Below are positions 11,498 through 44,999 of a stretch of DNA of 64,000 bases, one piece after another. The translations under genes and the position numbers were made by a program. The notes beneath the pieces were generated by a model, which was not told where the DNA came from, did no database searches, and saw nothing but the letters and a program-made list of their open reading frames with translations. The stretch is taken from the IMG/VR virus record IMGVR_UViG_3300042326_002445, positions 159,647 to 223,646 of that record, one strand, 5' to 3'. Every line of letters begins with the position of its first letter. Within the stretch, counting starts at the first letter, position 1.

Positions 11498-12256
11498 ATG
11501 ACCTCCATGTTTACTCTTTTAACAGCAAGTTATAATAATATTTCGTATCTTGAGCAGTGGATGCACAGTGTTTTATCTCAAGATTATAGACCTTTACGTG
11601 TTTCTTTCGTTGATGATTGCAGCAATGATGGGACTGACGTGAATTTTCATAAATATGCACAAAAATTAGCAAATCAAGACATACAAGTAGAATACGTAAA
11701 AAATAGCAAAAGACTTTTTTATGGAAATTGTCTAAAGATCGCTTATGACATGTCAAAGGGAGATTTTTTTGGCTGTTTAGACGCAGATGATGGCTTAACC
11801 TCAGACGCCGTCTCTTCCGTAATGGAACAATATTTAAAATATCCGCATATTGGTTACGTGTATACTCAGTTTAAAATGTGCGACATCAATCTTAATCCTA
11901 CGAAAAGAGGTTTTAGTTCATGTCCACCTATGGGTAGCAGTCTTTTAAATGAGGGCAAAAGGAATAAACATTGTTATAGTCATTTTAGAACTTTTTCTAA
12001 TAGGGTAGAAAGATTGGAAAAAATATGGGCAAAAGATATGAGGTGCGCTGTTGATAAATACATGGGATATCGTCTTGAGGAGCTCGCAGACGGCCTGTTT
12101 CTCGACAAAGAGTGTTATCTGTGGAGGACTGGCAGAAAAGACTCCATAGGACATACAGAGCCATCTAGGGCTCAGTGGACAAAGGTTATGATTGAAGCCC
12201 GTAAGAGACGCACTATGTGGAAATTAAGTCCAAGACCAATCATTCATATAAAATGA
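11498..12256 (+). CDS. GT2 glycosyltransferase
   Basis: TASYNN, FVDDCSND, LDADD. Confidence 0.85.
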   Translation: MTSMFTLLTASYNNISYLEQWMHSVLSQDYRPLRVSFVDDCSNDGTDVNFHKYAQKLANQDIQVEYVKNSKRLFYGNCLKIAYDMSKGDFFGCLDADDGLTSDAVSSVMEQYLKYPHIGYVYTQFKMCDINLNPTKRGFSSCPPMGSSLLNEGKRNKHCYSHFRTFSNRVERLEKIWAKDMRCAVDKYMGYRLEELADGLFLDKECYLWRTGRKDSIGHTEPSRAQWTKVMIEARKRRTMWKLSPRPIIHIK

Positions 12257-14613
12257 AAATATCTGTTGTCACTACACTTTTTAATTATAAATCATACATT
12301 GTAGACTGCATAAAAAGTGTAGTGACGCAAGATTTTTATGATTTAGAAATGATTGTTGTAGATGACGGATCAACTGACGGGGGTCCAGAGTGTGTTGAAA
12401 GAAAATTTGCAGAAGACTCAAGAGTAAAGCTGGTCCGTTTAAACAAAAATTATGGCTATTCAGTTGCCAAAAATGTTGGGATATCCATGTCTTCTGGAAG
12501 CTTTATATGCATGCTTGATGCAGACGACATGCTTATGCCCAGTTCGCTTTCAAAAAGATATAATAAGATTCTAGAAGGTTTCGACTTAGTGCATGGATGG
12601 GCTTACAACTTTCATAAAAATAAACGTTGGGAAAATGATTTAAGAAAAAAATGGATTGAAAATAAAAAACCAGTGTTTCAATGGAAGAATATCCACCCAC
12701 AATGCGTTCTTCTTAAAAAAGATTTGCATAATTCTATAGGCTTGTATGATGAAGATCTAAAATGCAAGAGTGACAGAGAAATGTGGGCTAGAATATTTAA
12801 CCACGGGTTTAAAATTGGTTTTATAGATGAACCTGTTGCTCTTTATAGGCAACATCCATCTCAGATGCATAAAAGCCCGTGGAAAATAAAGAATAATAAG
12901 CGTTTAGCAAGCGAGCTTTTGAGTCTTGTCGAAATAAGAAAGAGCGATATATCAGAATGCCAAATGCTATCTAATTATAATTGGAAAGATAAAATATTGA
13001 GCAAGCAAAAGTTAAATAATTCAGAAGCTGAGCCGATGGCTAGGGAAAATCCAGCATTGTTGTATGGAGAAGATTTTTTTTCTAAAAGAACTTCTAACAA
13101 GCATGATTGGGGCCTTGAGATGGGAAAGTATTTGTCAATGAAGTTGAATCTTTCGTCTGTTATAGATTGGGGATGTGGTATTGGATCTTTAATTTCTGGT
13201 GCAAAATTACAAGGTGTGGAAAAATTGCTTGGAGTAGAGGTTGGTTATGATGCGGCAAAGCCATATCTTGTTGAAAACGTAAAAGATAATATTGTGTACG
13301 GAAATGCTGCGCACAAATGCGATTTCGGCAAATTTGACGCAGCAGTATCTATAGAGGTAGCCGAACACTTATTGCCAGAACAGGCTGATGTTTTTTGTGA
13401 TAATTTAGCTAATAGCTCTTCAAGAATTATTGTTATTACTGCTGCAAGACCAGGACAAGAAGGTGTTTATCATTTTAATTGTCAACCAAAAGAATATTGG
13501 ATAAATAAGATACAAAAGCTTGGATTCACATACAGGCAAGATTTGTCGGATAAGATATCAAAGGGATGGAGAGAAAATGTCCCTGGGATTCCTTCGTATC
13601 TCACTCAAAATGTTATGGTATTTAAAATAGATTCTAAATGTCCAGATGATATAAAAAAAAAGAACATACATATAGGCAAATCAGCTGACATTATTAAAGT
13701 TAGTTTTGATCTTCCAGATAATGACTCTAGTGGCAAGCATAAATTTTTTCAAAGAGTAAGAGAGAATCTTCACTTTTTTAACTGCAAACCAGTTGGTTCT
13801 GCTGAAAAATCAGATATACATTTTTATATAAATAATCCAAGTAAAAAGTCTGTAGTTAACATTAAAAGATTAGATGGCGTATATTTTGATGGGACAAATA
13901 GTACAAAAGTAAAAAATTCTGGCATACTTAATTCTATGAAAATTGCAGATGGAATAGTATTTCAAAGTCAATACTGTAAGGATTACGGTTGTAAAATACT
14001 TAATTTTAATTCGCATAAACCTAATGCGGTTATATACAACGGTTGTGACCCGAGTGAATTTACGGTTGCTCCAAAAGAAATTGGATGTCCATATTTCTTA
14101 GCTTTATGTAAATGGCGTCGTCACAAAAGACTACGGGAATCTGTTGATGGCTTTATAAAAGCTAATATTGATGGTGTTAAACTTGTTGTGTGTGGACCCC
14201 CAGACTACAGAGTTGACCATCCTGGAGTTATATATGCTGGAGATTTGAACAGATCTGATTTAGCACGGTATATCGCTGGATGTATTGGTACAGTGCACCT
14301 TGCATGGATAGATTGGTGTCCCAATTCTGTTGTAGAAAGCATAGTCGCTGGAAAACAGGTAATACATACTAATTCTGGCGGAACATCAGAAATAGTAAAA
14401 AATAGGGGATATATGGTTTCTGATACTGTTTGGCATGGAGAGCAGGCGAGTCCTAAGAATCCACCGCAAATCAATTTAGACGAAATCGCATTGGCATACA
14501 TAAAGAGTTATCGCAATCCAATAATAAATTTTAATTATAATGATTTATTGATATCTAATTCAGTAAAGCAGTATATAGAATTTGGAATTTCCGTACTCAG
14601 GAGTAAAAAGTGA
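12253..14613 (+). CDS. three-domain fusion: GT2 + class I SAM methyltransferase + GT4
   Basis: VDDGSTD/LDADD (GT2); IDWGCGIG, SIEVAEHL (methyltransferase); CPNSVVESIVAGKQVIHTNSGG (GT4). Confidence 0.85.
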   Translation: MKISVVTTLFNYKSYIVDCIKSVVTQDFYDLEMIVVDDGSTDGGPECVERKFAEDSRVKLVRLNKNYGYSVAKNVGISMSSGSFICMLDADDMLMPSSLSKRYNKILEGFDLVHGWAYNFHKNKRWENDLRKKWIENKKPVFQWKNIHPQCVLLKKDLHNSIGLYDEDLKCKSDREMWARIFNHGFKIGFIDEPVALYRQHPSQMHKSPWKIKNNKRLASELLSLVEIRKSDISECQMLSNYNWKDKILSKQKLNNSEAEPMARENPALLYGEDFFSKRTSNKHDWGLEMGKYLSMKLNLSSVIDWGCGIGSLISGAKLQGVEKLLGVEVGYDAAKPYLVENVKDNIVYGNAAHKCDFGKFDAAVSIEVAEHLLPEQADVFCDNLANSSSRIIVITAARPGQEGVYHFNCQPKEYWINKIQKLGFTYRQDLSDKISKGWRENVPGIPSYLTQNVMVFKIDSKCPDDIKKKNIHIGKSADIIKVSFDLPDNDSSGKHKFFQRVRENLHFFNCKPVGSAEKSDIHFYINNPSKKSVVNIKRLDGVYFDGTNSTKVKNSGILNSMKIADGIVFQSQYCKDYGCKILNFNSHKPNAVIYNGCDPSEFTVAPKEIGCPYFLALCKWRRHKRLRESVDGFIKANIDGVKLVVCGPPDYRVDHPGVIYAGDLNRSDLARYIAGCIGTVHLAWIDWCPNSVVESIVAGKQVIHTNSGGTSEIVKNRGYMVSDTVWHGEQASPKNPPQINLDEIALAYIKSYRNPIINFNYNDLLISNSVKQYIEFGISVLRSKK

Positions 14614-15551
14614 TTAGTCATGTGATATTGCATTATAACAGACCTTGGCTTCTCAAAGCTCATATAGATTTAATTAGACATTTTTGTCCGTCTGTTTCTG
14701 AAATAATAATAGCTGATGATGGATCTGACAGTAGAGTTATTAACTATATAAGCAAGATAGGAGCAAATGATGTCTATGTGCAAAAGAATCACTTGCATGA
14801 ATGGGACAAAAGTTCTGCTTCTAATACTCTCATTAATAGTATTAAAAGATGCAAAAATAAATATATAAGTTTTTCCGAAGACGATTTTTTTGTTTGCCCA
14901 AGCGGGATAGATGACAGCTCTTTTTACAATAACGGAGAGTATCCCAGTGGAAAGATTTCAGGTGGTTGCGATCCGTTAGAAGATTGTCTATTTCTTTTCA
15001 AGAATCAAAGAGCAATCATAATTCAGCCTTCCAGAGATGCAAATGGATGGAAAGGAGTTCCATGTACTGGAAAAACCAGGGCAAATAAGTCTACTTGGTG
15101 CCAAATTGATCACGAAAAGAAGAAAAGATTTTATTATAGTAATTGGCCTTGGGTTATGCAGTATCAAGTGGCAAAGCACTTAGATATTCCAAGAGATTCT
15201 GGCATGTGGAGAGTCGAAAGTCATTTAAATAAGTGGATGACTAAGAATTTTGGAAATGGTAATTGGAATTGGTGTGCTCAAAAAAGAATGTTCATTCACG
15301 TTGGTCTGCCTTTTTCTAAAAAAGATATGAGATATTCAGATAATACTGAAAAGTCTATGATTAGAAATGAGCAGTCAAAAGCATTTGCCGACTCTATAGG
15401 TCATAAGCAAAATTTTGAAAATATTAATGATTTTAATAATATTTTTTTAGAAAAATGGCTTGAAAAGAAAAGCGAAATTTTAGTCCAATCTCTTTCAGAA
15501 AATGGCATAAAGAACACTTTTGAAAGGTTCGCAACCGAGGTTATGTCGTGA
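14610..15551 (+). CDS. GT2-like glycosyltransferase
   Basis: ILHYNRP, ADDGSD, SEDDF. Confidence 0.7.
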   Translation: MISHVILHYNRPWLLKAHIDLIRHFCPSVSEIIIADDGSDSRVINYISKIGANDVYVQKNHLHEWDKSSASNTLINSIKRCKNKYISFSEDDFFVCPSGIDDSSFYNNGEYPSGKISGGCDPLEDCLFLFKNQRAIIIQPSRDANGWKGVPCTGKTRANKSTWCQIDHEKKKRFYYSNWPWVMQYQVAKHLDIPRDSGMWRVESHLNKWMTKNFGNGNWNWCAQKRMFIHVGLPFSKKDMRYSDNTEKSMIRNEQSKAFADSIGHKQNFENINDFNNIFLEKWLEKKSEILVQSLSENGIKNTFERFATEVMS

Positions 15552-16447
15552 AGATAGATTATATTGTTTTACATTGGAATAGGCCTTATTTTGCAGAAAT
15601 TAATGTAAAATTGGCAAAGCTTTATTTCCCTTTCATTAGAAATTTTATACTTCTTGACGATGGCTCAGAACCAAATTGTATTGAAATTTTAAAGAAAGAA
15701 TTTACTGAAGTAATAACGAGTAAAAATAATAAAAATGAGTGGAAAAACGGCAGTGTTGGTTATTTGTTGGAAAATTTTTTTACACAATCAGATGCGGACT
15801 TTATAATATTTACAGAAGATGATTTTTTACCGTGTTTGAATTATTTTGATGATTCAGAAACAGAAAACACTCTAATATCTCCTGATGTCCTGTTTAAACA
15901 GTGTGTGGTTGCAGAGAATTTAGAAACACATATACACAACATAGGCAGTCCTTTTTTCTATTTAAATTTAGGAAAATCTAATTATGGATGGAAGTCTTTA
16001 GACGCATACGAGTACAATGATAATTTTTTAAGAGTAATTCCGCATAAAGAAAAAAGAATTTATAGCAATTGGCCTTGGATAATGGGTAAAAATGTGTTTA
16101 AAAAAGCTATGAAAAATTTGAAAGATGCACCCATTTGGCAAATAGAAAATATAATTGACGGTAACATGAAAAAAATATCTAGAGTTAAGCCTTTGTGTGT
16201 AAAGCAAAAAATGTTTATACATGCTGGCTTCATATGCACAACGAGAAAAGACGCATTTTCTCAAATAGGCAAATTTAATAAAAATAGACTCACTAGTGCT
16301 AGTAACTTTACTGGAGAGTCTCAGACTAGTCTAGATGCTTTGCGTAGTGAATATTTATCTAAATATTTTTCTGGAAAAAGAATAAGCATGGAAGATCTTT
16401 TTACAAAAGGACTTCATCATGCTTTGAAAAATTTTATCACTTCATAG
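15548..16447 (+). CDS. GT2-like glycosyltransferase, tandem paralog of 14610..15551
   Basis: VLHWNRP, LDDGSE, TEDDF, YSNWPW, MFIH.G shared with the upstream gene. Confidence 0.7.
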   Translation: MKIDYIVLHWNRPYFAEINVKLAKLYFPFIRNFILLDDGSEPNCIEILKKEFTEVITSKNNKNEWKNGSVGYLLENFFTQSDADFIIFTEDDFLPCLNYFDDSETENTLISPDVLFKQCVVAENLETHIHNIGSPFFYLNLGKSNYGWKSLDAYEYNDNFLRVIPHKEKRIYSNWPWIMGKNVFKKAMKNLKDAPIWQIENIIDGNMKKISRVKPLCVKQKMFIHAGFICTTRKDAFSQIGKFNKNRLTSASNFTGESQTSLDALRSEYLSKYFSGKRISMEDLFTKGLHHALKNFITS

Positions 16448-16838
16448 TAACTTCTGAGACAATACCGGCTAATGGAATTGGCTGACTGATTGGCTGCCAT
16501 CCAGATAGCATATTACTGTCTTTGGGCTTAGCGCCTATCTCAGCGTTTGTTGCTACAGTCACGTGAGGCTTTCTGCCGTCTTTAACATCGTATCCTTTTA
16601 CTCCAACTGCTATCACCTTTTCATCTTTTGCCCATTCAGTGGCAGTCAAATTTATAATTTGCCCAATTTCTTTTTTGTTTTTTGCTGGTCCCATATTTAT
16701 GGTCATATGATGTGCATAAATCTTCCAGCCTTTTGGGATAAACGTACTCATTCTTTCAACCAAAATTTGATGACTTGCTTGGTCTAGAATGATGCCCGTA
16801 TATGATATGTTTTGATTAGCTTTTTTATACCAATTCAT
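16437..16838 (-). CDS. 2H phosphoesterase with MNWYKKA N-terminal motif
   Basis: Two HxT motifs: HHMTI and PHVTV. Confidence 0.8.
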   Translation of the reverse strand: MNWYKKANQNISYTGIILDQASHQILVERMSTFIPKGWKIYAHHMTINMGPAKNKKEIGQIINLTATEWAKDEKVIAVGVKGYDVKDGRKPHVTVATNAEIGAKPKDSNMLSGWQPISQPIPLAGIVSEVTMK

Positions 16839-16916
16839 AATGTATAATTTTATTTTCCTATATGGATCATTCTTTCCTTTCTTATTGTCTCGAAGGATAC
16901 GATATATTTAGAGTAG

Positions 16917-16987
16917 TGCCCCGTGATGTAACGGTAGCATCGGAGCCTTTGAAGCTTTTTGTCTTGGTTCGAATCCAAGCGGGGCAG
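16917..16987 (+). tRNA. tRNA-Gln (anticodon TTG)
   Basis: Acceptor TGCCCCG/CGGGGCA, anticodon loop CTTTGAA, GTTCGAAT T-loop, U1-A72 and G73; no encoded CCA. Confidence 0.93.
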
Positions 16988-16992
16988 TTTTT

Positions 16993-17388
16993 ATGAATAA
17001 AAGCGATATTTCAAAAGTAGAATTTATTTTTCCAAAATTAATTCAAATATGGGAAAAAGCACCAGAGTCAAGGCCTGCATCTATGTCTGGCGTCAGATGT
17101 GCTCATGACCTATGGGATTGGTGTGATGAAAGACTAATGGATTTTGATGATCTTGAAACATATTTGAGTATGTTTATAATTGAAAAATTATCTAAATTTT
17201 TTGCTTTGTCTATTACCATTAAAAATGGAACTCAAGAAATAAAAAATGTAGATGAAAATATATCTGTTTCTGGTTTCAGCATTATTTCATCTCTATCTGA
17301 AATGATAAAAATTTCTGAGAATATGAATGAATTAAAGAATAGTTCTGTTGAGACTATTCGAAAGACAGTTCTTAAGGCTGCTCGCTAA
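16993..17388 (+). CDS. hypothetical protein
   Basis: 131 aa ORF. Confidence 0.7.
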   Translation: MNKSDISKVEFIFPKLIQIWEKAPESRPASMSGVRCAHDLWDWCDERLMDFDDLETYLSMFIIEKLSKFFALSITIKNGTQEIKNVDENISVSGFSIISSLSEMIKISENMNELKNSSVETIRKTVLKAAR

Positions 17389-17658
17389 TTATCGTAGCTT
17401 TAATACATAGACGCACATTTCAGCTCTTTTGCTGAATAATTCTATACTTTTTTTAATTTCTATACAATTAAGGTTTTCTATAAAATCTTTATTTTTAAGA
17501 GTATCGTCTATTAGCAAATTAAATTCTTTTACAGTTTTATCTTCTAAGTCTTGTTTTAAAGCTTCTTTCCATAAAGAAATATCCCAACCAAATATTTTGT
17601 TTACACCTAAAGCCTTGAGGGTGTCTAGGTTGTTCGATAAATGATTAGGTTCGCACAT
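17389..17658 (-). CDS. hypothetical protein
   Basis: 89 aa ORF; stop abuts the convergent gene. Confidence 0.55.
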   Translation of the reverse strand: MCEPNHLSNNLDTLKALGVNKIFGWDISLWKEALKQDLEDKTVKEFNLLIDDTLKNKDFIENLNCIEIKKSIELFSKRAEMCVYVLKLR

Positions 17659-18283
17659 GATTATGGAAAAACACCTACAGTTTAATTCAGAAAAATTTAA
17701 TAAATTCTTTTCTTCTCCTTTTGATTTTTCAAAACAAATTTCTCTTGAAAAGTATTTGATTACCTCATTAGGTCATGATTTTGTTACAGAAGAAGAAAGA
17801 TGTAAAGTGCTTTTAAAAACTTCATTTACAAAAAACGAAGCTATGGGGTATGCAAGCTATAGTGGCGGTCACCCTTCTCGAAAGTTTATAACAAAACTTA
17901 TGCAGATAATGAGATCGTTAGACACGGAAATTATCTTGTTTTGGATGAACTGCTTGCAGTCTGACGAATATCACAGAGCATTTTTGCAAAAGTGTTGGCG
18001 AGCAAGTGGGTGTAAGCTAAGCGAAAATTGGCAGACAAGAGCATTTCGCATTTGGGATTTTGTAAAAGTTAATAAATTTGTCGCAACCAATGCTGTCATA
18101 ATATTGCCTGATAAAAAGTCTTGTGAAGACCATAAAGACCTTGACGGAGCTATGAATAATTTTGGAATGGCTGGATCAAATTTTTTTGTAAGAAAAAATA
18201 GGTATAGTTTACCTTCTTTTTGTATGTGTTTAAACATTGATGTTTTGAATGAATGTATCATAGACATGAAAGACGGGATATAA
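17657..18283 (+). CDS. hypothetical protein
   Basis: 208 aa ORF. Confidence 0.75.
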   Translation: MIMEKHLQFNSEKFNKFFSSPFDFSKQISLEKYLITSLGHDFVTEEERCKVLLKTSFTKNEAMGYASYSGGHPSRKFITKLMQIMRSLDTEIILFWMNCLQSDEYHRAFLQKCWRASGCKLSENWQTRAFRIWDFVKVNKFVATNAVIILPDKKSCEDHKDLDGAMNNFGMAGSNFFVRKNRYSLPSFCMCLNIDVLNECIIDMKDGI

Positions 18284-18289
18284 TACAGT

Positions 18290-18883
18290 ATGAGCAATCA
18301 GAAAAAATCAAAGTCAAAAATTTCACAAAAGTCTAATAGCGTAAAAAATTTTAATAACTACCATTCTCATATGTGGAAAACTTATGCATCTAATGTTTCG
18401 ACTGGGAGTATTAATTCTTACCCATATAAGTGGGAAGACAAGTCGTTTGAGCCAGAAATTATTGATTTAGGCTTCGAAGGATGGACTTTTTCTCTTACGC
18501 ACAATGTTACTCAGACAAAGATTGAGGGAATAAAACATTTTGAAGCTAGTGGAATATCTATTGTTATTGCAGCTTCAATTTTAGATAGTAGCAAAAATGA
18601 TTGGTATAAAGTTTTTGTGTCCCTCAATACAGCAACTCCAAATGATTCAAATATAATTAATCAAGATGAAAATAATATAGATATAAAAGTTTCAATCAAG
18701 TCTAATGATGATGACTACAAAAATTGGTTTAAAAACTGGTCAATTAACCAAGACGGCATGTGCTTATCTTTTTCTTCAAAAGACAACATGTCTGTAATTG
18801 AAGAAATGTCTATAATAGGAAATATTATAGAAAAAATTAAGGGGAGACTAATCCTTGAAAAACTTTCGCAAAACAAATCTTAA
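18290..18883 (+). CDS. hypothetical protein
   Basis: 197 aa ORF. Confidence 0.75.
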   Translation: MSNQKKSKSKISQKSNSVKNFNNYHSHMWKTYASNVSTGSINSYPYKWEDKSFEPEIIDLGFEGWTFSLTHNVTQTKIEGIKHFEASGISIVIAASILDSSKNDWYKVFVSLNTATPNDSNIINQDENNIDIKVSIKSNDDDYKNWFKNWSINQDGMCLSFSSKDNMSVIEEMSIIGNIIEKIKGRLILEKLSQNKS

Positions 18884-19004
18884 AAACAATCAAGTACAAA
18901 TCGATAAATGTGCTTTTAAGATATGGCTTAGTGGTTTTGTTGTAGGCGTGATACTAACTTTTTCTTTTGTTAGTTTGGTTATGGTGCTTAATGCTTGGCA
19001 TTAA
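18855..19004 (+). CDS. small single-pass membrane protein (not in ORF track)
   Basis: TTG start after GGGGAG; 49 aa with IWLSGFVVGVILTFSFVSLVMVL. Confidence 0.5.
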   Translation: MKNFRKTNLKNNQVQIDKCAFKIWLSGFVVGVILTFSFVSLVMVLNAWH

Positions 19005-19379
19005 TTAGAAAGCTATTTGACGCATTTGCTCAAGTAAAGCTTTGCCTGATGTAAGCAATTCTATGTTTACATTTTTTTCTTTTGCTTTTGTCGCATTTTT
19101 TGGGTCTTTTACATATTCTATTGCTTCTTGAAATACATTTTTTAAAGCTATTAGTGCGTCGTTGTTATTAGACTGTTCTGCTTCTTCTATAAAACAATGC
19201 CAAGTGTTGTTGTGAGTTAATCCTCTAGGACCTGTATTACCACCTTGTATGTTTTTTATTGGGTTTACTTTAATAAAATTTTTATTAAGTATATCTACTA
19301 GGTCTTTACATTCTTGAGCTAGAACTGTAGACTGATTTTGTGAAATTTTATTAAAATGTTTGGTAACTATTTTAAGCAT
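19005..19379 (-). CDS. hypothetical protein
   Basis: 124 aa; N-terminal FNKISQ resembles YKISQ of ORF 46503..47030. Confidence 0.7.
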   Translation of the reverse strand: MLKIVTKHFNKISQNQSTVLAQECKDLVDILNKNFIKVNPIKNIQGGNTGPRGLTHNNTWHCFIEEAEQSNNNDALIALKNVFQEAIEYVKDPKNATKAKEKNVNIELLTSGKALLEQMRQIAF

Positions 19380-20015: not shown

Positions 20016-20049
20016 ATATGATGTTTTGTCGAAAAAATATAACAATACT

Positions 20050-20793
20050 ATGGCTAAATATTTAATTAATTATGCAGCAACTGGAACAAATTGGGCACAA
20101 AACAATCCTAATGGTGGCTATTTTAATGCGCAAAAATTAAATAGCAAAACTGGATTAGAAGTCGCTGGATTTGATCATGTTATAAATTACGGGATCCATT
20201 CTTTATCAGAAGATTTTAAAAAAACGCATTCTAAGCATTTTCAATATACTAGAGGCGCTGGATATTGGGTATGGAAGCCTCAAGTAATAATAGACGCTCT
20301 AAGTAAAATAAAAAATGATGACATACTCATGTATTCTGATTCTGGATGTCATTTTATACACTCAATGAACCCAATTTTTGAGAAAATGGAAAATACATCT
20401 AAAAAATGCTTATGTTTTAATTTAGCTCAAAAAGAACATGAGTGGACAAAAAGAGATTGTTTCATTGCCATGGAGTGCGATCAGCCTGATATTGTTTACG
20501 GCAAACAAATTATGAGTACATTTTTCTTATGCAAAAAAAATGACTTTTCTACTTTCATTGCAAATGAATGGCAAAGATGGATAAGTGATTTCCATATGGT
20601 TGCAGACGAATTCGTATCTCCTAGTGTATCTCCTAATTATCCAGAATTTAAAGAACACAGGCATGATCAGTCAATTTTTAGTCTATTATGCAAAAAACAC
20701 AGAATTGATTTTATGGAAGACATTACAGAATGGGGCGATCCATCAGAAAGAAAAACTCCACAAATTGTTTCTCATACTAGGAAAAGAGATTGA
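20050..20793 (+). CDS. putative GT-A nucleotide-sugar transferase
   Basis: RGAGYWVWKP, YSDSG, EHRHDQSIFSLL. Confidence 0.6.
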   Translation: MAKYLINYAATGTNWAQNNPNGGYFNAQKLNSKTGLEVAGFDHVINYGIHSLSEDFKKTHSKHFQYTRGAGYWVWKPQVIIDALSKIKNDDILMYSDSGCHFIHSMNPIFEKMENTSKKCLCFNLAQKEHEWTKRDCFIAMECDQPDIVYGKQIMSTFFLCKKNDFSTFIANEWQRWISDFHMVADEFVSPSVSPNYPEFKEHRHDQSIFSLLCKKHRIDFMEDITEWGDPSERKTPQIVSHTRKRD

Positions 20794-35527: not shown

Positions 35528-36429
35528 ATACATTAATTACTGGCGGAAAAGGGTTACTTGGTAGCGCTCTTGATTTTGGCTTTAAGCCAAGCAAAGATGA
35601 GGTTGATTGCCTAAAATATGATCAACTTTCTAACTATATCAAGAATAACAATATTGACTCTGTTGTTCATGCAGCTGCAAGAGTCGGCGGCGTAAAAGCA
35701 AATACAGATTTTGTTTATGACTTCTTTTCTGAAAATATTATGATGAGCACTAATGTAATGAATGCTTGTAAAGAGTTTTCATTTAAAAAAGCAATATTCA
35801 TAGTTTCAACATGCGCCTTTCCAACATCGGCTCCATTGCCACTAAAAGAAGAGTATCTTCATACTGGAGAACCACATCATACAAACTTTGGCTATGCTTA
35901 TGCAAAGAGAATGCTTGAAGTTGGATCAAGGGCCTTGCGACAGCAGTATAAGATAAATAGCTCTTGCGTCATACCATGCAATCTATACGGACAAGACGAT
36001 AATTATAATCTGCAAAGTGGTCACGTAATCCCAAGCCTTATACATAAGTGCTGGATAGCAAAAAGCACAAATACAATATTAGAAATTTGGGGTTCAGGTA
36101 AAGCAGAGAGAGAATTTATATACATCAAAGATTTTGCCAATATTGTTGATGAGATAATGAATAAAGACATTAATGTTGCTGAAACAATGATAGTATCTCC
36201 TGGTCTAACTTACACTATAGAGGAAATAGTTTATCATATTATAAAAATACTTAAGTTTGAAGGAAACGTATTTTTTGATAAAAATAAACCCGAAGGCATA
36301 ATGAAGAAAAATTCAGATAACTCTACCTTCAAGAAACATTTCTCTGACTTTAAATTTACAGATTTAGACACTGGGCTTAACGCTACAATTGAATATTTCA
36401 TAAAAAATTATGAATCTTTGAGAAAATAA
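35524..36429 (+). CDS. fcl: GDP-L-fucose synthase
   Basis: HAAARVGGVKAN, STCAFP, HHTNFGYAYAKR, PCNLYG, HVIPSL, WGSGKAEREFIY, KPEG. Confidence 0.92.
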   Translation: MNTLITGGKGLLGSALDFGFKPSKDEVDCLKYDQLSNYIKNNNIDSVVHAAARVGGVKANTDFVYDFFSENIMMSTNVMNACKEFSFKKAIFIVSTCAFPTSAPLPLKEEYLHTGEPHHTNFGYAYAKRMLEVGSRALRQQYKINSSCVIPCNLYGQDDNYNLQSGHVIPSLIHKCWIAKSTNTILEIWGSGKAEREFIYIKDFANIVDEIMNKDINVAETMIVSPGLTYTIEEIVYHIIKILKFEGNVFFDKNKPEGIMKKNSDNSTFKKHFSDFKFTDLDTGLNATIEYFIKNYESLRK

Positions 36430-36433
36430 AATT

Positions 36434-37375
36434 ATGAAAGTACTTGTAACTGGTGGTGCTGGATTCATTGGATCTAATTTAGTAGACCGATTAGTTTATG
36501 ATGGTCACGATGTCACGGTGATTGATAACGAATCATCGGATGCCCATGATCAGTTCTATTGGAATCCCGCTGCCAAGAACTACAAGTATGACATCAATGA
36601 CTACACGATGGTTCGTAAACTGTATGAAGGCGTGGACACGGTTTTCCACCTTGCTGCTGAAGCCCGTATTCAGCCATGCATTGTTGATCCACTGAAGGCG
36701 GTGGAAGCCAATATGCTAGGAACCGCTACTGTATTGCAGTGCGCTCGTGTATGCGATGTCAAGCGTGTCATTTATTCATCTACTTCTTCTGCTTATGGTG
36801 TGAAAAATACACCTCCCCTTCACGAGGATATGCCAAATGACTGCCTGAATCCGTATTCGGTTTCAAAAGTAGGTGGTGAAGAATTATGCAAAATGTATTC
36901 AAAATTATATGGTTTAGAAACTATTATTTTTAGGTATTTTAACGTTTACGGAGAGCGTCAGCCGTTGAGGGGTCAGTATGCTCCAGTGATAGGAATATTC
37001 TTGCGTCAAAGAGCATCCGGGCAGCCTATGACTATTGTAGGAGACGGCAATCAGAGAAGGGATTTTACACATGTTAGCGATGTTGTTGAAGCTAATATTT
37101 TAGCGTCGAAATTTACAGCGCCTGAATATAATATTTCAGATTTTGGCAGTTGCAGTATTTATACAAATTGGCTATGGGGTCAAATATATAACATAGGAAC
37201 TGGAAGAAACCATTCAATCAATGAAATAGCTAACCTAATGGGTGGTGAGACAAAAAACATACCTCCAAGATTGGGAGAATCTCGTGTCACTTTGGCTAAT
37301 GCAGAAAAAGCAAAAAAGCATTTCGGATGGATCCCAAAAGTTAGTCTTGAAAATTGGATAGAAATGAGTAAATAA
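36434..37375 (+). CDS. NAD-dependent nucleotide-sugar epimerase
   Basis: VTGGAGFIGS, FHLAA, SSTSSAYG, PYSVSK, RYFNVYG, RDFTHVSDVV. Confidence 0.9.
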   Translation: MKVLVTGGAGFIGSNLVDRLVYDGHDVTVIDNESSDAHDQFYWNPAAKNYKYDINDYTMVRKLYEGVDTVFHLAAEARIQPCIVDPLKAVEANMLGTATVLQCARVCDVKRVIYSSTSSAYGVKNTPPLHEDMPNDCLNPYSVSKVGGEELCKMYSKLYGLETIIFRYFNVYGERQPLRGQYAPVIGIFLRQRASGQPMTIVGDGNQRRDFTHVSDVVEANILASKFTAPEYNISDFGSCSIYTNWLWGQIYNIGTGRNHSINEIANLMGGETKNIPPRLGESRVTLANAEKAKKHFGWIPKVSLENWIEMSK

Positions 37376-37377
37376 AT

Positions 37378-38076
37378 ATGAATGAAGAAAGATATGAACA
37401 TCCACAAATAAAGTTTATGAAAAATATAGATCCAAACTTATCAAGTTTGGAGCAATTTAACTTAATTAGGTCGTATCCTTGGGGCTGTGAACAACCTCAG
37501 GTAGACGTGTTTTGCGAATTGTTAAAAACAATAGATCACGACCATCCAAGCATGATTGAGCTTGGAAGTGCAGGTGTAGGCGGTTCTTTTTATTCAGTTC
37601 TTTTTGAAAAATGGTTTGATAAAAAATGCACTATTATCAATAACGATCCAAGACTTGAAATATTGCAAGAAATAAAAACATATTGGAAAAATCAGCATTT
37701 GACAAACGCAATACTTTGTCATGGATATGTTGGAACGCCAAAGCATTATCAAGCAAGCCCAGATTTTGAAGCAGAAAAAGTACCAAGATTAACGGTAAAG
37801 CAAATGATGGAAGATAACAACATTGTTAATCTTGATATCTTGCATGCAGATATACAGGGTTCTGAAATTTCCCTATGCGAAGAATTAGTAAGTCATAATA
37901 TAATAAAAAAAATACGTTACTATTTTATTAGCACTCATTCAGGAGAAAATCTTAATACTTATGATTTATGTTTAAATGTTTTTAATAATAGTATGAAATG
38001 TAAGTTTCATTTTTCGGATCCGCTTAAGGGTGGCTGGGGAGATGGACTGATAGTGGTAGAGAATATTGAATTTTAA
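37378..38076 (+). CDS. FkbM-like methyltransferase
   Basis: IELGS, LDILHADIQGSE, FISTHS. Confidence 0.7.
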   Translation: MNEERYEHPQIKFMKNIDPNLSSLEQFNLIRSYPWGCEQPQVDVFCELLKTIDHDHPSMIELGSAGVGGSFYSVLFEKWFDKKCTIINNDPRLEILQEIKTYWKNQHLTNAILCHGYVGTPKHYQASPDFEAEKVPRLTVKQMMEDNNIVNLDILHADIQGSEISLCEELVSHNIIKKIRYYFISTHSGENLNTYDLCLNVFNNSMKCKFHFSDPLKGGWGDGLIVVENIEF

Positions 38077-38093
38077 TTTAAGGTAATTATTTT

Positions 38094-38705
38094 ATGAAAC
38101 AAGAAATATTAGATTTATGGTATAAAAATAACGATGTACATGATTTTTTGCATAGACATAAACTTTCTAACGAAAGTTTAATAGTGGATGTGGGATCATA
38201 CAAGGGCAGCTGGCTGCATCATATGAACAAGCTTTACGGATGCAGATGCATCGGGGTGGAACCAGTGGCAGAATTTGTAAAAGAGTCTGTGAAATTAGAA
38301 TTCAATAACGATTGTCAAATTCATCATTTTGGATTAACTACTGACGATTTGTTAGAAGATTATATAAATATTGATGAAGATGCTTCTTCCATGTTTAAAA
38401 TACAAGGATTAGAAACAGGAAGAAAAATTGATCTTAAAAATGCAAAAGACTTTTTTTTATCAATAGGCGACCGCATAGATGTATTGCAAATTAATTGTGA
38501 AGGAATGGAATACAGCTTAATACCATTTATGATTGATAACGATCTATTTAAAAACGTAAATTTTGTTCAAATACAGTTTCATGACATATCTGAATCTAGC
38601 AATAGAGCCATGCATCATTGCATAGATATAATAGAAAAAAATGGGTTTAAAACTAAGTTTGAATACCCTTTTGTGTGGTACGGTGCAGAAAAGGTGAGCA
38701 AATGA
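38094..38705 (+). CDS. FkbM-family methyltransferase
   Basis: VDVGSYKG, GVEP, QINCEGMEY, QIQFH. Confidence 0.8.
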   Translation: MKQEILDLWYKNNDVHDFLHRHKLSNESLIVDVGSYKGSWLHHMNKLYGCRCIGVEPVAEFVKESVKLEFNNDCQIHHFGLTTDDLLEDYINIDEDASSMFKIQGLETGRKIDLKNAKDFFLSIGDRIDVLQINCEGMEYSLIPFMIDNDLFKNVNFVQIQFHDISESSNRAMHHCIDIIEKNGFKTKFEYPFVWYGAEKVSK

Positions 38706-39202
38706 TATCTTATTCGCAATCAGGCCAAGATTTATACGCATTTGAAAAATCTAATCAAAAGACGAACGGTTTTTATATTGAGATAGGAGCATTTCATCCC
38801 ATAGAAAATAGTAATTCTTATATGCTGGAAGAGCTTGGCTGGAAAGGTATTAGTTTTGAAATTAGCGATATTACAGATTTATGGTATAGTAAAAGAAAAA
38901 ATAAGCTTATAGTTTGTGATGCAACTAGTTTTGATTTTTTAAATTGTTTTAATCAAAATAACGTGCCTAATCAAATTGATTATCTTTCTTTAGACATAGA
39001 TGGTGAAACATTAAATTGCCTTAAAAAACTGCCATTAAGTCAATTTCGTTTTAAATCAATTACTATTGAACATGACGAATATCATAGGGGCAGTAGCATG
39101 AAAAATGAGATAAGAGATATACTTTTAGGCAATGGGTATTCATTGGATAGACCAGATGTGTCTAGCAATAATCTGATATACGAAGACTGGTGGACGGGTT
39201 AA
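38702..39202 (+). CDS. FkbM-family methyltransferase
   Basis: SQSGQD, YIEIGA, IDYLSLDIDG, TIEHD, YEDWW. Confidence 0.8.
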   Translation: MISYSQSGQDLYAFEKSNQKTNGFYIEIGAFHPIENSNSYMLEELGWKGISFEISDITDLWYSKRKNKLIVCDATSFDFLNCFNQNNVPNQIDYLSLDIDGETLNCLKKLPLSQFRFKSITIEHDEYHRGSSMKNEIRDILLGNGYSLDRPDVSSNNLIYEDWWTG

Positions 39203-42418: not shown

Positions 42419-43231
42419 TTAGACGTATCGTCTGTCTGGATTCTTCTTCATGATCTCTTTGCCCATTTTGACGAGAGCGTTTTTGCTTCTCATCGCATGC
42501 ACGATAGCTGGATCAACAACCGACTCCTTATGAGTCATGTATTCAACAAATTTCCAAGGCATACCTTCAGGTATGTTGTCTTTTAATGCTCCAGTCCATT
42601 CACTTGCCCATATGTCCATGTAGTTTTTATGCATTCTTTTTTCGTAATCAAGACTGAACATATGAGACAATACCCCTATAGGGACCTCCTCTGGTAAATT
42701 AAGTCCTAATTTTGCTTGATATTGTCTGAAATTATTCACTACATATTTTGCGTGTTTGGCGAACTCTTTTTTACAAATCCAGAAACCACCATTTGTGTTG
42801 TACACCACTTTTTGAGACACTCCAAACTGTCTCCAAAGGTTGACCATATTTTCATTCTTCACGCTCCACCAGTCAGACCTTAGTGTTGTTGGGTCATTGA
42901 GCGGACTTTCCAGAAAGCTGTGCCAAACATCATTACCTATAATTTCTGAAAAATCTAGGATTGGTTTTCTGACAAAATAATGATCACTATCTATAAATAC
43001 TAGCAGATCGTAATCCATTTCTGCGACCTTGACAAGATACTCAAATTTCCAATATTGAGTTTGATCCATTTGTATCTCTTTTATCATAGCTCTTGTTTTG
43101 CAGCCATGAAGAGGCTCATCGCAGTAAACCACAATGTCATGTTCAATGCCGCAGTTCCTCATGCTTTGCACAAGAGATTGTAGCATATACCTATATTCAC
43201 CCCAAGCAACAGACCAAATCAATGTTTTCAT
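42419..43231 (-). CDS. GT-A nucleotide-diphospho-sugar transferase-like
   Basis: FIDSDH DxD, NGGFWI, PEE; paralog of 6915..7808. Confidence 0.65.
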   Translation of the reverse strand: MKTLIWSVAWGEYRYMLQSLVQSMRNCGIEHDIVVYCDEPLHGCKTRAMIKEIQMDQTQYWKFEYLVKVAEMDYDLLVFIDSDHYFVRKPILDFSEIIGNDVWHSFLESPLNDPTTLRSDWWSVKNENMVNLWRQFGVSQKVVYNTNGGFWICKKEFAKHAKYVVNNFRQYQAKLGLNLPEEVPIGVLSHMFSLDYEKRMHKNYMDIWASEWTGALKDNIPEGMPWKFVEYMTHKESVVDPAIVHAMRSKNALVKMGKEIMKKNPDRRYV

Positions 43232-44283
43232 GATTTTACCTCTATGTTTTGACCAGCAAGGTTTAAAAGATTATCCCATTTAGCAATATATTTATTCTTG
43301 TCACACCATATATCTTTGGCGTACTCACTAGCCTTTTTGCCCATAGTCTTTCTAGTATGCGTGTCACACATATGCCTTGCTGCGTCCTTAGCCTGATCAA
43401 GATTGTCCCATAAGAATCCGCATTCATTTTCTATGATCATGTTTGGAAAGTTCCATTTGCGTGGAGCTATTACTGGTGCTCCAGTAAGCTGGCTTTCCAT
43501 AATTGCCCTACTTTGATTTTCTACAAATTTAAAATTGCAGTTGTACAGAAATACGTCAAGGTCTACGAACCACTCATGAGTTGGCATAGCGTTAGTTGCG
43601 TACAGTCTCCATTTATCATTGAATTCATACCAGCTGTAAATGGAAGATAATGAGTCAGACCATCCTAGTATTGAATACTCACAGTTTAGCCCTTCGCAAA
43701 CTTGGTCATAAAAAATAGGAAAGTTATCGCCAAATTTCATTACGTCATCTCTGGAAACTTTTCCAAACACTGTTTTATTTCTTAAGGGTCTGTCTATATA
43801 CTTCCACATATCAGCTTCAAAGTAATTTTCTAATACAAATGTTTTTTGAAGACGATTTTGATTTGCTACTTCTTTATGCATCACAGACCTATGAAAGGGT
43901 GATGTGTATAGTACAACGTCTACTTGATTTTTCTTTATGGCGCTCAATTCCTCTGGAGTATGCCACATCATATCATTAGACCACATGAATTTTAGACCAG
44001 ATTCTTTTATGAAATTTATTCTTTGAAAATCAGCAAAAACACGGAAATTGCAATTGGAGTAGGCAAAACCTGTTAATTTTTTTGGCAAGCTTGACATCAT
44101 GCAATATTTTATGCCAAGTTTATCTAAAAAGTCTGTATTATGCTTTTCTCTCAGTCTAAATTCATCATTGGGAATACATGTAATATTATGAGTATCTTTT
44201 AATAAAACGAGCAATTCTTTCAGTCTTGTGTCTGCTCCACCAAGATCTGATATCCATTGAAATACATATAGGTTTTCTTTCAT
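43228..44283 (-). CDS. GT4 (GT-B) glycosyltransferase
   Basis: LGGADTRL, ENQSRAIMESQLTGAPVIAP, ENECGFL. Confidence 0.75.
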   Translation of the reverse strand: MKENLYVFQWISDLGGADTRLKELLVLLKDTHNITCIPNDEFRLREKHNTDFLDKLGIKYCMMSSLPKKLTGFAYSNCNFRVFADFQRINFIKESGLKFMWSNDMMWHTPEELSAIKKNQVDVVLYTSPFHRSVMHKEVANQNRLQKTFVLENYFEADMWKYIDRPLRNKTVFGKVSRDDVMKFGDNFPIFYDQVCEGLNCEYSILGWSDSLSSIYSWYEFNDKWRLYATNAMPTHEWFVDLDVFLYNCNFKFVENQSRAIMESQLTGAPVIAPRKWNFPNMIIENECGFLWDNLDQAKDAARHMCDTHTRKTMGKKASEYAKDIWCDKNKYIAKWDNLLNLAGQNIEVKS

Positions 44284-44336
44284 GTATCATTTATCGGTTA
44301 AAAAGTAAATCTGCTGATTAGACGAAGAACTATTAT

Positions 44337-44999
44337 ATGGAAAATACAGTAACATTTACAACTACAGCGATGGCTAGACCGGAGATACTTGAACAAACAT
44401 ATTATAATTTTCAAATATGCTTGAATATAAACATGAAAGATTTTGATTTACGAATAAATGTTGACCCATTGCCAAAAATAAATAAAGTTGATGAAGTAGT
44501 AAATGTAGCAAAGAAATTCTTTAAAAATGTTGACTATAACATATCAAAAGATGCCAATTTTCCTAGCGCAATCAAGTGGTGTTGGATGGACTTGCACACT
44601 AAATACACTTTTCACTTGGAAGACGATTGGGAGTTAACAAGGGGTATACCGCTCTATGAATTAGTAAAAATGCTTGAGAGCAATAAAGATATTAATCAAG
44701 TTTTACTAAGACCGTATCTTGAAACACATAAAGTAAGTTTAGTTCCTGGATTAATAAGAAGTGATGTCGCAATGTATTTAAGTAGGCATATGTTGCTTAA
44801 TAAAAATCCAGAAAAACAAATTCATTCAAATGAGCATACAGGAAAAGACGGAGATCCTGGCTTTGACGCCAATAAAGTCATAGTATATCCAGAAGATGTG
44901 TGCCTAAGGGACATCGGAAGAGTTTGGATGAAATCTCAATCTGTAATCAGGCCTGGCCCAGACTTCGTAAAATGGGAAAAGAAAAAAGATATTTACTGA
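44337..44999 (+). CDS. GT2-like glycosyltransferase
   Basis: TAMARP, INVD, FHLEDDW. Confidence 0.6.
   Translation: MENTVTFTTTAMARPEILEQTYYNFQICLNINMKDFDLRINVDPLPKINKVDEVVNVAKKFFKNVDYNISKDANFPSAIKWCWMDLHTKYTFHLEDDWELTRGIPLYELVKMLESNKDINQVLLRPYLETHKVSLVPGLIRSDVAMYLSRHMLLNKNPEKQIHSNEHTGKDGDPGFDANKVIVYPEDVCLRDIGRVWMKSQSVIRPGPDFVKWEKKKDIY

What the first reader, a model, noticed from the sequence alone, without database searches (positions are those of the whole stretch)
11498..44999. Glycan-biosynthesis island of about 33 kb in a phage-like genome
Seen: about 20 glycosyltransferase-like genes, about 7 methyltransferases, a sulfotransferase and nucleotide-sugar enzymes in alternating-strand, tightly coupled operons. 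Flippase, polymerase (Wzx/Wzy), ABC exporter and initiating phosphoglycosyl transferase genes were not recognised. Known: cyanophage P-SSM2 carries an LPS-like gene cluster, and some mycobacteriophages and giant viruses glycosylate their virions. Inference: the lack of export machinery favours cytoplasmic glycosylation of virion proteins over a host O-antigen or capsule.
Basis: partly seen in the sequence, partly recalled or inferred. Interest (0 to 1): 0.78.

Follow-up and report, generated by a model that had tools for sequence, protein, structure and literature searches.

The report
Giant glycan-building island in lake megaphage
A fragment of a very large freshwater phage carries about 33 kb of tightly packed sugar-transferring and sugar-modifying genes with no export genes; this is the largest example I found of a gene cluster type already known from big cyanophages, and its target (the phage's own proteins or the host's surface) is still undecided.

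Summary
Window 11453-44999 has 43 ORFs. Nineteen are glycosyltransferases (11 over Pfam cut-offs, 8 by weaker evidence). There are also 5 methyltransferase genes, a sulfotransferase and 7 sugar-nucleotide enzymes. 29 of 32 same-strand junctions overlap or lie within 10 bp.

The contig is an IMG/VR virus record judged about 55% complete, recurrent in lake-water metagenomes. No multi-pass membrane protein, phosphoglycosyl transferase or sugar nucleotidyltransferase was found on about 264 kb.

Glycan extension directly on lipid A-core needs no dedicated exporter, so the missing exporters do not separate the two readings. Nearly half the genome is unseen.

New findings:
- The island is hypervariable among relatives.
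- One gene pair, a GT4-like GT-B (43228-44283) and a GT6/GT8-like GT-A (42419-43231), is kept at 53-79% identity across divergent phages and is predicted to form a heterodimer (score 0.92, best control 0.00).
- Five giant ORFs on the contig carry poly-serine linkers, and glycosyltransferase genes bracket one block of giant ORFs.

Best guess (0.42): cytoplasmic glycosylation of phage proteins with fucosylated, methylated, sulfated glycans. Main rival (0.35): remodelling of host surface glycan. It is a new, larger member of the known phage "LPS cluster" kind.

The parts
11453..12256 (+). GT2 glycosyltransferase
   Evidence: Pfam PF00535, 69.7 bits
12217..14613 (+). Three-domain enzyme: GT2, methyltransferase-like, GT-B-like
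   Evidence: PF00535 100 bits at residues 16-144. Weak methyltransferase match at 312-385 and weak GT1 match at 638-735. PDB search: chondroitin synthase and GalT1 for the N-terminus, type-12 methyltransferase for 308-420
14610..16447 (+). Two paralogous GT2-like genes (14610-15551, 15548-16447)
   Evidence: PF00535 20.1 bits, below cut-off; the two are paralogs, E 6.6e-22
16437..19379 (.). Interruption: six small non-glycan ORFs and tRNA-Gln (16917-16987)
   Evidence: No glycan family hit; ARAGORN; conserved in relative L012
19398..20045 (-). GT25 glycosyltransferase
   Evidence: PF01755 66.8 bits; 52% identical to 40757
20026..21561 (+). Two GT-A-like genes (20026 GT34-like; 20794 GT8/GT6-like lead)
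   Evidence: ESM atlas scores 0.98 and 0.94; clusters mostly Uroviricota
21554..23500 (+). Three unassigned ORFs (21554, 22279, 22919)
   Evidence: No Pfam or NCBIfam hit. PF03016 tested and negative. 22279 has a homolog inside the glycan module of huge phage LR756508.1
23502..24131 (+). Sulfotransferase
   Evidence: PF00685 41.3 bits
24132..25097 (+). GT10 fucosyltransferase-like
   Evidence: PF00852 26.9 bits
25078..31465 (+). Modified-sugar module: 2OG oxygenase (weak), short DegT-like, transketolase N half, unassigned 27186, TylF methyltransferase, transketolase C half, SDR dehydratase-like, weak class I methyltransferase
   Evidence: Pfam and NCBIfam
31462..32990 (-). GT10 (31462-32358) and weak GT25-like (32355-32990)
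   Evidence: PF00852 40.5 bits; PF01755 16.8 bits plus paralogy to 40757
33112..34784 (+). Two tandem GT2 paralogs, 70% identical
   Evidence: PF10111 and PF00535; BLASTP
34781..35527 (+). GT11-like candidate
   Evidence: Matches the same gene of LR756504.1 as the GT11 at 39199; no direct Pfam hit
35524..37375 (+). GDP-L-fucose synthase-like SDR (35524) and GalE-like epimerase (36434)
   Evidence: NF047922 209 bits, below cut-off; TIGR01179 150 bits, below cut-off
37378..39202 (+). Three FkbM-type methyltransferase genes
   Evidence: PF05050: 18.9 (weak), 33.6 and 31.9 bits
39199..42295 (-). Operon GT11, GT10, GT25, GT2
   Evidence: PF01531 79.6, PF00852 41.4, PF01755 83.4, PF10111 31.2 bits
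42419..43231 (-). Conserved core: retaining GT-A, GT6/GT8-like, DxD motif present
   Evidence: Model pLDDT 84; BoGT6a Z 13.3, LgtC Z 12.3. 57-77% identical in relatives
43228..44283 (-). Conserved core: GT4-type GT-B, predicted partner of 42419
   Evidence: 229 homologs carrying PF13692/PF00534. Model pLDDT 92; BshA, MshA, TarM and SdgB folds. Complex score 0.92 against best control 0.00
44337..44999 (+). Unassigned ORF; homolog lies in the LR756508.1 glycan module
   Evidence: tblastn 32% identity, E 1.8e-19; no family hit
50899..51894 (+).
   Evidence: TIGR01472 414.2 bits, just under the 415 cut-off; PF16363 388.7 bits
6915..7808 (+). Paralog of the core GT-A with the DxD motif lost
   Evidence: BLASTP E 5e-32; alignment shows the DxD position replaced

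Best explanation
The island is a phage-encoded, export-free glycan assembly line that works in the cytoplasm of the infected cell.

Shown from the genes:
- It converts host GDP-mannose to GDP-fucose (dehydratase at 50899, synthase-like gene at 35524).
- It modifies other host NDP-sugars with an epimerase, a dehydratase-like SDR, an aminotransferase-like protein, a split transketolase, a 2OG oxygenase and O-methyltransferases.
- It encodes about 19 soluble Leloir glycosyltransferases, including three GT10 and one or two GT11 fucosyltransferases, three GT25 enzymes, a sulfotransferase and FkbM methyltransferases.
- The predicted product is therefore a fucosylated, methylated, sulfated hetero-oligosaccharide of ABH/Lewis-like flavour.

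Inferred:
- The conserved GT-B/GT-A pair (43228 and 42419) acts as a heterodimer on a conserved acceptor.
- The hypervariable remainder decorates that primer differently in different strains.
- The acceptor is phage protein. The leading candidates are the poly-serine linkers of the giant fibre-like proteins on the same contig, which would give the particle a glycan coat, as in mycobacteriophages, chloroviruses and mimivirus fibrils.
For: - All island proteins are soluble. There is no multi-pass membrane protein, Bac_transf or NTP_transferase on about 264 kb.
- The pair is present in every relative fetched. It is 53-79% identical there, while backbone genes are 28-42% identical, so the acceptor is probably conserved.
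- The pair is predicted to bind: score 0.92, best of 3 controls 0.00. That mark was reached by 58 of 80 solved complexes and 2 of 110 mismatched pairs.
- Five giant ORFs carry poly-Ser runs of up to about 45 residues. They also have a pectate-lyase-like beta-helix, RCC1 and Kelch propellers, and dockerin-like modules.
- A GT1 gene ends 1 bp before the 3286-aa ORF, and two glycosyltransferase genes follow the 3965-aa ORF.
- In relative L059 the pair and a small glycan operon abut an 885-aa poly-Ser protein and a 5102-aa PhageMin_Tail protein.
- The nearest protein clusters and folds are viral, including giant-virus glycosyltransferases, whose hosts have no LPS.
Against: - No glycoprotein has been observed.
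- The fragment is about 55% complete, and no capsid or tail hallmark was found on it.
- In G000 the island is at least 50 kb from the poly-Ser ORFs.
- A poly-Ser protein lies within 10 kb of the pair in 4 of 7 gene arrangements, which is not significant (my rough binomial p is about 0.14).
- GT25, GT8/GT6, GT10 and GT11 are classic LPS/LOS families.
- In several relatives the pair sits among nucleotide-metabolism genes rather than structural genes.
Confidence: 0.42

Rival explanations
1. Host-surface remodelling. The soluble transferases extend a lipid-linked host acceptor at the inner face of the membrane: lipid A-core, as in lipooligosaccharide synthesis, or an undecaprenyl-linked unit started by a host enzyme. 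The host's own MsbA/Lpt or O-antigen machinery then exports the product. The new glycan would block superinfection or stop progeny from sticking to infected cells.
For: - The family set (GT25, GT6/GT8-like, GT10, GT11, GT2, GDP-fucose genes) is the same as in the cyanophage 'LPS' or cell-wall clusters, which the literature reads this way.
- The island varies between close relatives, as surface-antigen loci do.
- Lack of exporters fits an LOS-type route (established knowledge).
- No structural hallmark lies next to the island in G000.
Against: - The core pair is far more conserved than expected for enzymes that act on variable host O-antigens, across phages of 26-52% GC.
- The host is unknown.
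- No lipid-binding or membrane-anchoring feature was seen.
- The closest clusters are viral, some from giant viruses.
Confidence: 0.35
2. DNA hypermodification. Some or all of the transferases attach sugars to modified bases of phage DNA to evade restriction, as in T4 and in the MT/5mYOX/GT clusters that add mono- to trisaccharides.
For: - In distant relatives the conserved pair sits among nucleotide-metabolism genes: ThyX, dNMP kinase, dCMP deaminase, RNR, IMPDH-like and PurA-like.
- Phage DNA glycans of up to three sugars are documented.
Against: - No ThyA-like hydroxymethylase, Tet/JBP dioxygenase or C5 methyltransferase was found on G000. The Tet/JBP search had no positive control, so it is weak.
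- About 19 transferases plus a sulfotransferase and O-methyltransferases far exceed any known DNA glycan.
Confidence: 0.08
3. Not a phage feature. The contig is a cellular or chimeric assembly, and the island is an ordinary bacterial polysaccharide locus.
For: - No capsid, terminase or portal gene was found on the fragment.
- GC jumps from about 33% to about 50% near the window end.
Against: - IMG/VR and CheckV class it as viral.
- It has a phage-type replication module and six tRNAs in the window but no cellular core genes.
- The same GC mosaic and gene order recur in relative G002.
- The same junction is assembled in a second record.
- A relative that carries the pair has a tail sheath gene.
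- The island is near-identical in 24 lake-water runs.
Confidence: 0.03

Closest known systems
'LPS' or cell-wall-modification gene clusters of large T4-like cyanophages (P-SSM2: 24 genes; S-SCSM2R: 22 genes including 13 glycosyltransferases)
   Same: - Same enzyme families: GT1, GT2, GT10, GT11, GT25, NDP-sugar epimerases and dehydratases, GDP-mannose dehydratase.
- Polymorphic between related phages.
- Function never tested.
   Different: - Larger: about 19 transferases in 33.5 kb, at least 23 on the contig.
- Different phage lineage: DnaE-type replisome, roughly 400 kb genome, freshwater.
- Adds a sulfotransferase, a split transketolase with a 2OG-oxygenase module, and several FkbM methyltransferases.
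- Contains a conserved, predicted heterodimeric transferase pair that has no tblastn match in 50,697 phage records.
GT25-GT10-(GT11)-GDP-fucose modules in huge phages LR756508.1 (484 kb) and LR756504.1 (636 kb)
   Same: Homologous genes in the same small-module order.
   Different: Those modules have 5-8 genes. Identity is only 24-49%.
Virus-encoded virion glycosylation (chlorovirus capsid glycans, mimivirus fibril glycans, mycobacteriophage capsid and tail-tube O-glycans)
   Same: - Soluble virus-encoded transferases.
- No lipid carrier or exporter genes.
- Multi-domain transferase-methyltransferase enzymes.
- Methylated and deoxy sugars.
- Fold neighbours among giant-virus proteins (the comparison systems are from established knowledge and PMC12619734).
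   Different: No virion glycan has been shown here. The acceptor is unknown. The host is a bacterium.
Lipooligosaccharide outer-core extension and Lewis/ABH mimicry in bacteria (Neisseria and Haemophilus Lgt enzymes, H. pylori Fut enzymes, E. coli O86, Bacteroides BoGT6a)
   Same: GT25, GT8/GT6, GT10 and GT11 act in series in the cytoplasm. BoGT6a is the best fold match of 42419.
   Different: Those loci are cellular and act on lipid-linked acceptors. Here the acceptor is untested.
GtfA/GtfB glycosylation of serine-rich-repeat adhesins and SdgA/SdgB glycosylation of Ser-Asp repeats
   Same: A two-protein transferase complex and Ser-rich acceptors in very large surface proteins. SdgB and TarM are among the fold matches of 43228.
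   Different: GtfA and GtfB are both GT-B, whereas here the pair is GT-B plus GT-A. There is no accessory Sec system. The resemblance is functional analogy only.

Membership tests
Phage 'LPS'/cell-wall-modification glycan clusters (P-SSM2 type) | Lies in a tailed-phage genome | tested here: inconclusive
   The contig is an IMG/VR virus record with a phage replication module and tRNAs. No structural hallmark was found on this 55% fragment. A relative that carries the pair has a tail sheath gene.
Phage 'LPS'/cell-wall-modification glycan clusters (P-SSM2 type) | Many Leloir transferases of several families plus NDP-sugar enzymes | tested here: met
Phage 'LPS'/cell-wall-modification glycan clusters (P-SSM2 type) | Sporadic and polymorphic between related phages | tested here: met
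   L012 is collinear at the left end. L019 and L020 have a reduced, rearranged island. Other relatives keep only the pair.
Phage 'LPS'/cell-wall-modification glycan clusters (P-SSM2 type) | T4-like cyanomyovirus backbone and cyanobacterial host | tested here: not met
   The polymerase is DnaE-like. The host is unknown. Only some relatives of the pair are binned with Cyanobium MAGs.
Wzx/Wzy- or ABC-dependent O-antigen or capsule locus | Initiating phosphoglycosyl transferase | tested here: not met
   PF02397 gave no hit, and no membrane protein of that kind was found on about 264 kb. The rest of the genome is unseen.
Wzx/Wzy- or ABC-dependent O-antigen or capsule locus | Flippase and polymerase, or an ABC exporter | tested here: not met
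   No multi-pass membrane protein was found by hydropathy scan. The one 3-segment candidate resembles a beta-propeller.
Virion protein glycosylation systems | Glycan covalently bound to virion proteins | not testable with these tools
   Needs particles and mass spectrometry.
Virion protein glycosylation systems | Transferase genes linked to genes of their substrates | tested here: inconclusive
   Transferase genes bracket a giant-ORF block. In L059 the pair abuts tail genes. The island itself lies among metabolic genes.
DNA sugar-hypermodification clusters | Route to a hydroxymethyl pyrimidine (hydroxymethylase, or C5 methyltransferase plus TET-like dioxygenase) | tested here: not met
   PF00303, PF12851 and PF00145 were absent from G000. 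The PF12851 search had no positive control.
CAZy GT6 | Retaining GT-A fold nearest GT6, with DxD (or NxN) motif | tested here: inconclusive
   The best matches of 42419 are BoGT6a and human GTA/GTB (Z 12.4-13.3), but GT8 enzymes score 12.2-12.3 and identity is 10-12%. The DxD motif is present.

The most novel reading that the evidence does not exclude
A conserved GT-B/GT-A heterodimer, widespread in large aquatic phages, primes O-glycosylation of poly-serine linkers in giant virion fibre proteins. A fast-evolving island of about 20 further transferases, methyltransferases and a sulfotransferase then builds strain-specific ABH/Lewis-like glycans on that primer. The tailed phage would thus carry its own glycan coat, comparable to mimivirus fibrils.
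Probability: 0.2. Interest if true: 0.85.

Novelty: new member of a known kind. Interest (0 to 1): 0.55.

Why it matters
What the large glycan clusters of big phages do has been open since P-SSM2 was sequenced in 2005, and it has never been tested. This contig is the most extreme case I could find. A 2025 paper called 13 glycosyltransferases possibly the highest number in a marine phage (PMC12801897).

The contig also offers a concrete way in. A two-gene core is conserved across many uncultured phages and is predicted to be a heterodimer. Candidate acceptors, the poly-serine linkers of giant proteins, lie on the same DNA. Both can be expressed in E. coli and tested without culturing the phage.

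If the glycan is on the particle, phage surfaces in lakes would carry blood-group-like sugars. That would bear on adsorption, grazing and lectin binding. If the glycan is on the host, it would be a large investment in superinfection exclusion by a lytic megaphage.

Tried and rejected
1. PurZ idea. The short PurA-like gene (44993-46003) is much closer to cellular PurA (224 bits) than to PurZ (46-74 bits). I did not pursue it as a sign of Z-DNA.
2. By eye I read 21554 as exostosin-like and 27186 and 34781 as O-fucosyltransferase-like. PF03016 and PF10250 gave nothing, and PF01531 hit only 39199. 21554 and 27186 stay unassigned.
3. 6056 as a degenerate copy of the GT-B partner: hhalign probability 0.1, rejected.
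4. Terminase_6N, HK97 capsid and tail sheath searches, plus PHROG scans of mid-size ORFs, found no structural hallmark on G000.
5. Association of poly-Ser proteins with the pair: 4 of 7 arrangements within 10 kb. The crude background is about 0.31 per locus, so this is not significant. I keep it as a lead only.
6. No RNA run holding the core pair was listed, so read laying was not used and expression could not be checked.
7. The look-up of encoding contigs on a window protein failed, probably because of start-codon choice.
8. Profile search of the GT-B against PDB sequences gave only generic GT4 matches.
9. The last NCBIfam scan of ten unassigned ORFs added nothing beyond a weak class I methyltransferase signal for 30548.

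Full report
**What the window is.** The window is the last 64 kb of a single 223,646-bp contig with 34.7% GC and no terminal repeat. The genome tool identifies it as an IMG/VR virus record, linear, with a CheckV completeness estimate of 55%. The whole genome should therefore be about 400 kb.

The contig has a phage-type replication module at 87-122 kb. PHROG matches there include a DnaE-like polymerase, DnaB-like helicase, UvsX/RecA-like recombinase, clamp loader and exonuclease (DnaE identity by tblastn). The window holds six tRNA genes. Ten giant ORFs of 1,776-5,596 aa fill contig positions 0-85 kb and 127-153 kb.

No terminase, HK97-type capsid or tail sheath gene was found on this fragment. 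A distant relative that shares the conserved glycosyltransferase pair does have a tail sheath gene. The island sequence is present almost word for word in 24 lake-water metagenome runs. No RNA run was listed. I accept "large freshwater tailed phage, incomplete".

**The observation.** It holds. The 43 ORFs between 11453 and 44999 break down as follows.

| Class | Genes | Evidence |
|---|---|---|
| Glycosyltransferases over Pfam cut-offs (11) | GT2: 11453, 12217, 33112, 33945, 41375. GT25: 19398, 40757. GT10: 24132, 31462, 39975. GT11: 39199 | |
| Glycosyltransferases by weaker evidence (8) | 14610, 15548, 32355, 43228, 42419, 20026, 20794, 34781 | |
| Methyltransferases | 28021, 38094, 38675 (firm); 37378, 30548 (weak); plus a methyltransferase-like domain in 12217 | |
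| Sulfotransferase | 23502 | |
| Sugar-nucleotide enzymes (7) | Three SDRs, short DegT-like, split transketolase, weak "sporadic carbohydrate cluster" 2OG oxygenase | |
| Unassigned | 21554, 22279, 22919, 27186, 44337 | |
| Non-glycan | Six small ORFs and tRNA-Gln in 16437-19379 | |

Of 32 same-strand junctions, 29 overlap or are at most 10 bp apart.

GDP-mannose dehydratase lies just outside the interval at 50899-51894 (414 bits). Together with the GDP-fucose-synthase-like gene at 35524 and the GT10 and GT11 genes, it points to a fucosylated product. No sugar-1-phosphate nucleotidyltransferase is present. The pathway must therefore draw on host NDP-sugar pools.

**Absence of export and initiation genes.** A Kyte-Doolittle scan found no multi-pass membrane protein anywhere on the contig. 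Bac_transf gave no hit. An identical IMG/VR record extends the contig 40.5 kb past the window end. It also has no transporter, and its one candidate resembles a beta-propeller. The absence therefore holds for about 264 kb. Roughly 40% of the genome remains unseen.

**What relatives show.** This is the most informative result.
- A 17.7-kb contig (L012) is collinear with window 4232-21491 at about 75% nucleotide identity.
- Two others (L019, L020) carry a reduced and rearranged island.
- More distant phages, with GC from 26% to 52%, share almost nothing from the island except two adjacent, 4-bp-overlapping genes: 43228-44283 and 42419-43231. These are 53-79% identical to their counterparts, while backbone genes such as the SNF2 helicase or the IMPDH-like gene are 28-42% identical.

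The island is therefore a conserved two-gene core plus a hypervariable extension.

Models of the two core proteins are confident (pLDDT 92 and 84).
- 43228 is a GT4-type GT-B. Its fold matches include BshA, MshA, TarM, SdgB and HepE.
- 42419 is a retaining GT-A, nearest to GT6 (BoGT6a Z 13.3, human blood-group A/B transferases) and then GT8 (LgtC, glycogenin, Z about 12.2-12.3).

A complex prediction scored 0.92 in three runs, against 0.00 for the best of three controls. That mark was reached by 58 of 80 solved complexes and 2 of 110 mismatched pairs. This supports binding but does not show it.

The top viral fold match of the GT-A is a 985-aa protein annotated with a GT1 domain. It may be a fusion of the two activities; I did not check this.

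A paralog of the GT-A at 6915-7808 has lost the DxD motif. It sits where relatives keep the pair, between PP-loop/IMPDH-like genes and DUF5856/SNF2.

**Candidate acceptors.**
- Five giant ORFs contain poly-serine linkers of up to about 45 residues, set between small Cys-containing modules.
- The giant ORFs also carry RCC1 and Kelch propellers, a pectate-lyase-like beta-helix and dockerin-like modules. Three neighbouring ORFs share N-termini, as fibre paralogs often do.
- A GT1 gene, cut by the contig start, ends 1 bp before the 3,286-aa ORF. Two glycosyltransferase genes follow the 3,965-aa ORF.
- In relative L059 the pair closes a small glycan operon (weak sulfotransferase, weak GT_PLOD, FkbM). 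It abuts an 885-aa poly-Ser protein and a 5,102-aa PhageMin_Tail protein.
- Other relatives have different poly-Ser proteins 4-6 kb from the pair.
- The tally is 4 of 7 gene arrangements. Against a crude background that is not significant, so it remains a lead.

**Mechanism.** The enzymology is read directly from the families. The acceptor is inferred. My best explanation (0.42) is cytoplasmic glycosylation of phage proteins. The core heterodimer would prime a conserved acceptor, and the variable enzymes would build strain-specific fucosylated, methylated, sulfated glycans on it.

The main rival (0.35) is remodelling of the host envelope glycan. By established knowledge, lipooligosaccharide-type extension on lipid A-core uses exactly these families. 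It needs no dedicated initiating transferase, flippase or polymerase, because host MsbA and Lpt carry the product out. Host-surface remodelling is also the published reading of the cyanophage clusters.

DNA glycosylation (0.08) is disfavoured. No hydroxymethylase, TET-like dioxygenase or C5 methyltransferase was found on G000, and the enzyme set is far too large. However, the pair's position among nucleotide-metabolism genes in several relatives keeps this reading alive for the pair alone. A cellular or chimeric origin is unlikely (0.03).

**Comparison with what is known.** The island belongs with the "LPS" or cell-wall-modification clusters of large cyanophages. P-SSM2 has 24 such genes (PMC1079782). 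S-SCSM2R has 22, including 13 glycosyltransferases of families 1, 2, 10, 11 and 25, described as possibly the highest number in a marine phage (PMC12801897). Small homologous GT25-GT10-GT11-GDP-fucose modules also occur in the 484-kb and 636-kb huge phages LR756508.1 and LR756504.1.

This one is larger, lies in a different phage lineage and comes from fresh water. It adds a sulfotransferase and a branched or modified-sugar module. Its conserved pair has no tblastn match in 50,697 deposited phage records, although it has at least 229 metagenomic homologs. I class it as a new member of a known kind and score interest at 0.55.

Noticed in passing
contig G000 371-84881 and 127234-152899 (loci L001-L008, L046-L051): Ten giant ORFs (1,776-5,596 aa) take up about half of the contig. 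Five carry poly-serine linkers of up to about 45 residues between small Cys-containing modules. Domains seen: RCC1 and Kelch propellers, a pectate-lyase-like beta-helix, dockerin-like and EF-hand-like modules.
   Followed up: partly
window 56000-64000, continuing in L056-L058 (G003 40001-83922): GC rises from about 33-38% to 47% at the window end and to 48-59% in the next 40 kb. Relative G002 has a syntenic block of about 50 kb at 42-54% GC inside a 29-36% GC genome. This compositional mosaic is conserved and unexplained.
   Followed up: partly
window 44993-46003 (-), with 2866-3678 and 3569-4741: A short (336 aa) PurA-like gene with an internal deletion, a PP-loop ATPase and an IMPDH/GMP-reductase-like gene recur near the glycosyltransferase pair in distant relatives (L061, L063). 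The PurA-like gene is closer to cellular PurA than to PurZ.
   Followed up: partly
window 8307-8394, 16917-16987, 46144-46477: Six tRNA genes, including two tRNA-Ser (anticodons GGA and ACT). The poly-Ser tracts use AGT, AGC, TCA and TCT codons, so the phage tRNA-Ser genes might serve them. Speculative.
   Followed up: no
contig G000 97192-98544 and 98537-100489 (L005, L053): The DnaE-like polymerase appears split into two ORFs of 450 and 650 aa that overlap by 8 nt. This could be a frameshift, programmed or not, or a real split.
   Followed up: no
L021 4839-5747 (-), L022 4255-5769 (-), L023 5004-5777 (-), L027 about 1175-1399: A conserved Cys-rich protein with a poly-Ser/Thr linker of very variable length (9 to about 110 residues) lies about 4.3 kb from the glycosyltransferase pair. 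The public gene call for the same sequence in L044 splits it and calls an opposite-strand gene over the linker.
   Followed up: partly
window 6915-7808 (+): This paralog of the core GT-A has lost its DxD motif, and so has its ortholog in L012. It could be an inactive or non-catalytic copy.
   Followed up: partly
window 25776-26441 (+): The DegT-family aminotransferase homolog is only 221 aa, against about 360 for the family. It matches in two pieces, so it may be truncated or repurposed.
   Followed up: no
L044, L060, L062 (relatives carrying the pair): The pair is followed by ThyX, an HldE-like PfkB/cytidylyltransferase fusion, PrkA, DUF444 and a SpoVR gene interrupted by an intein with a LAGLIDADG domain. 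L060 also has a TnpB/Cas12f-like gene.
   Followed up: no
window 46958-47335 (+): This 125-aa ORF is the only one on the contig with three hydrophobic segments. It overlaps the PGDYG gene by 73 bp, so it may be spurious or a small membrane protein.
   Followed up: no
window about 63700-64000, continuing in L056: The last ORF, cut by the contig end, has repeats of an NPNATPE...VR motif that look like leucine-rich-repeat-variant or HEAT-like repeats. Paralogous copies follow in the extension.
   Followed up: no
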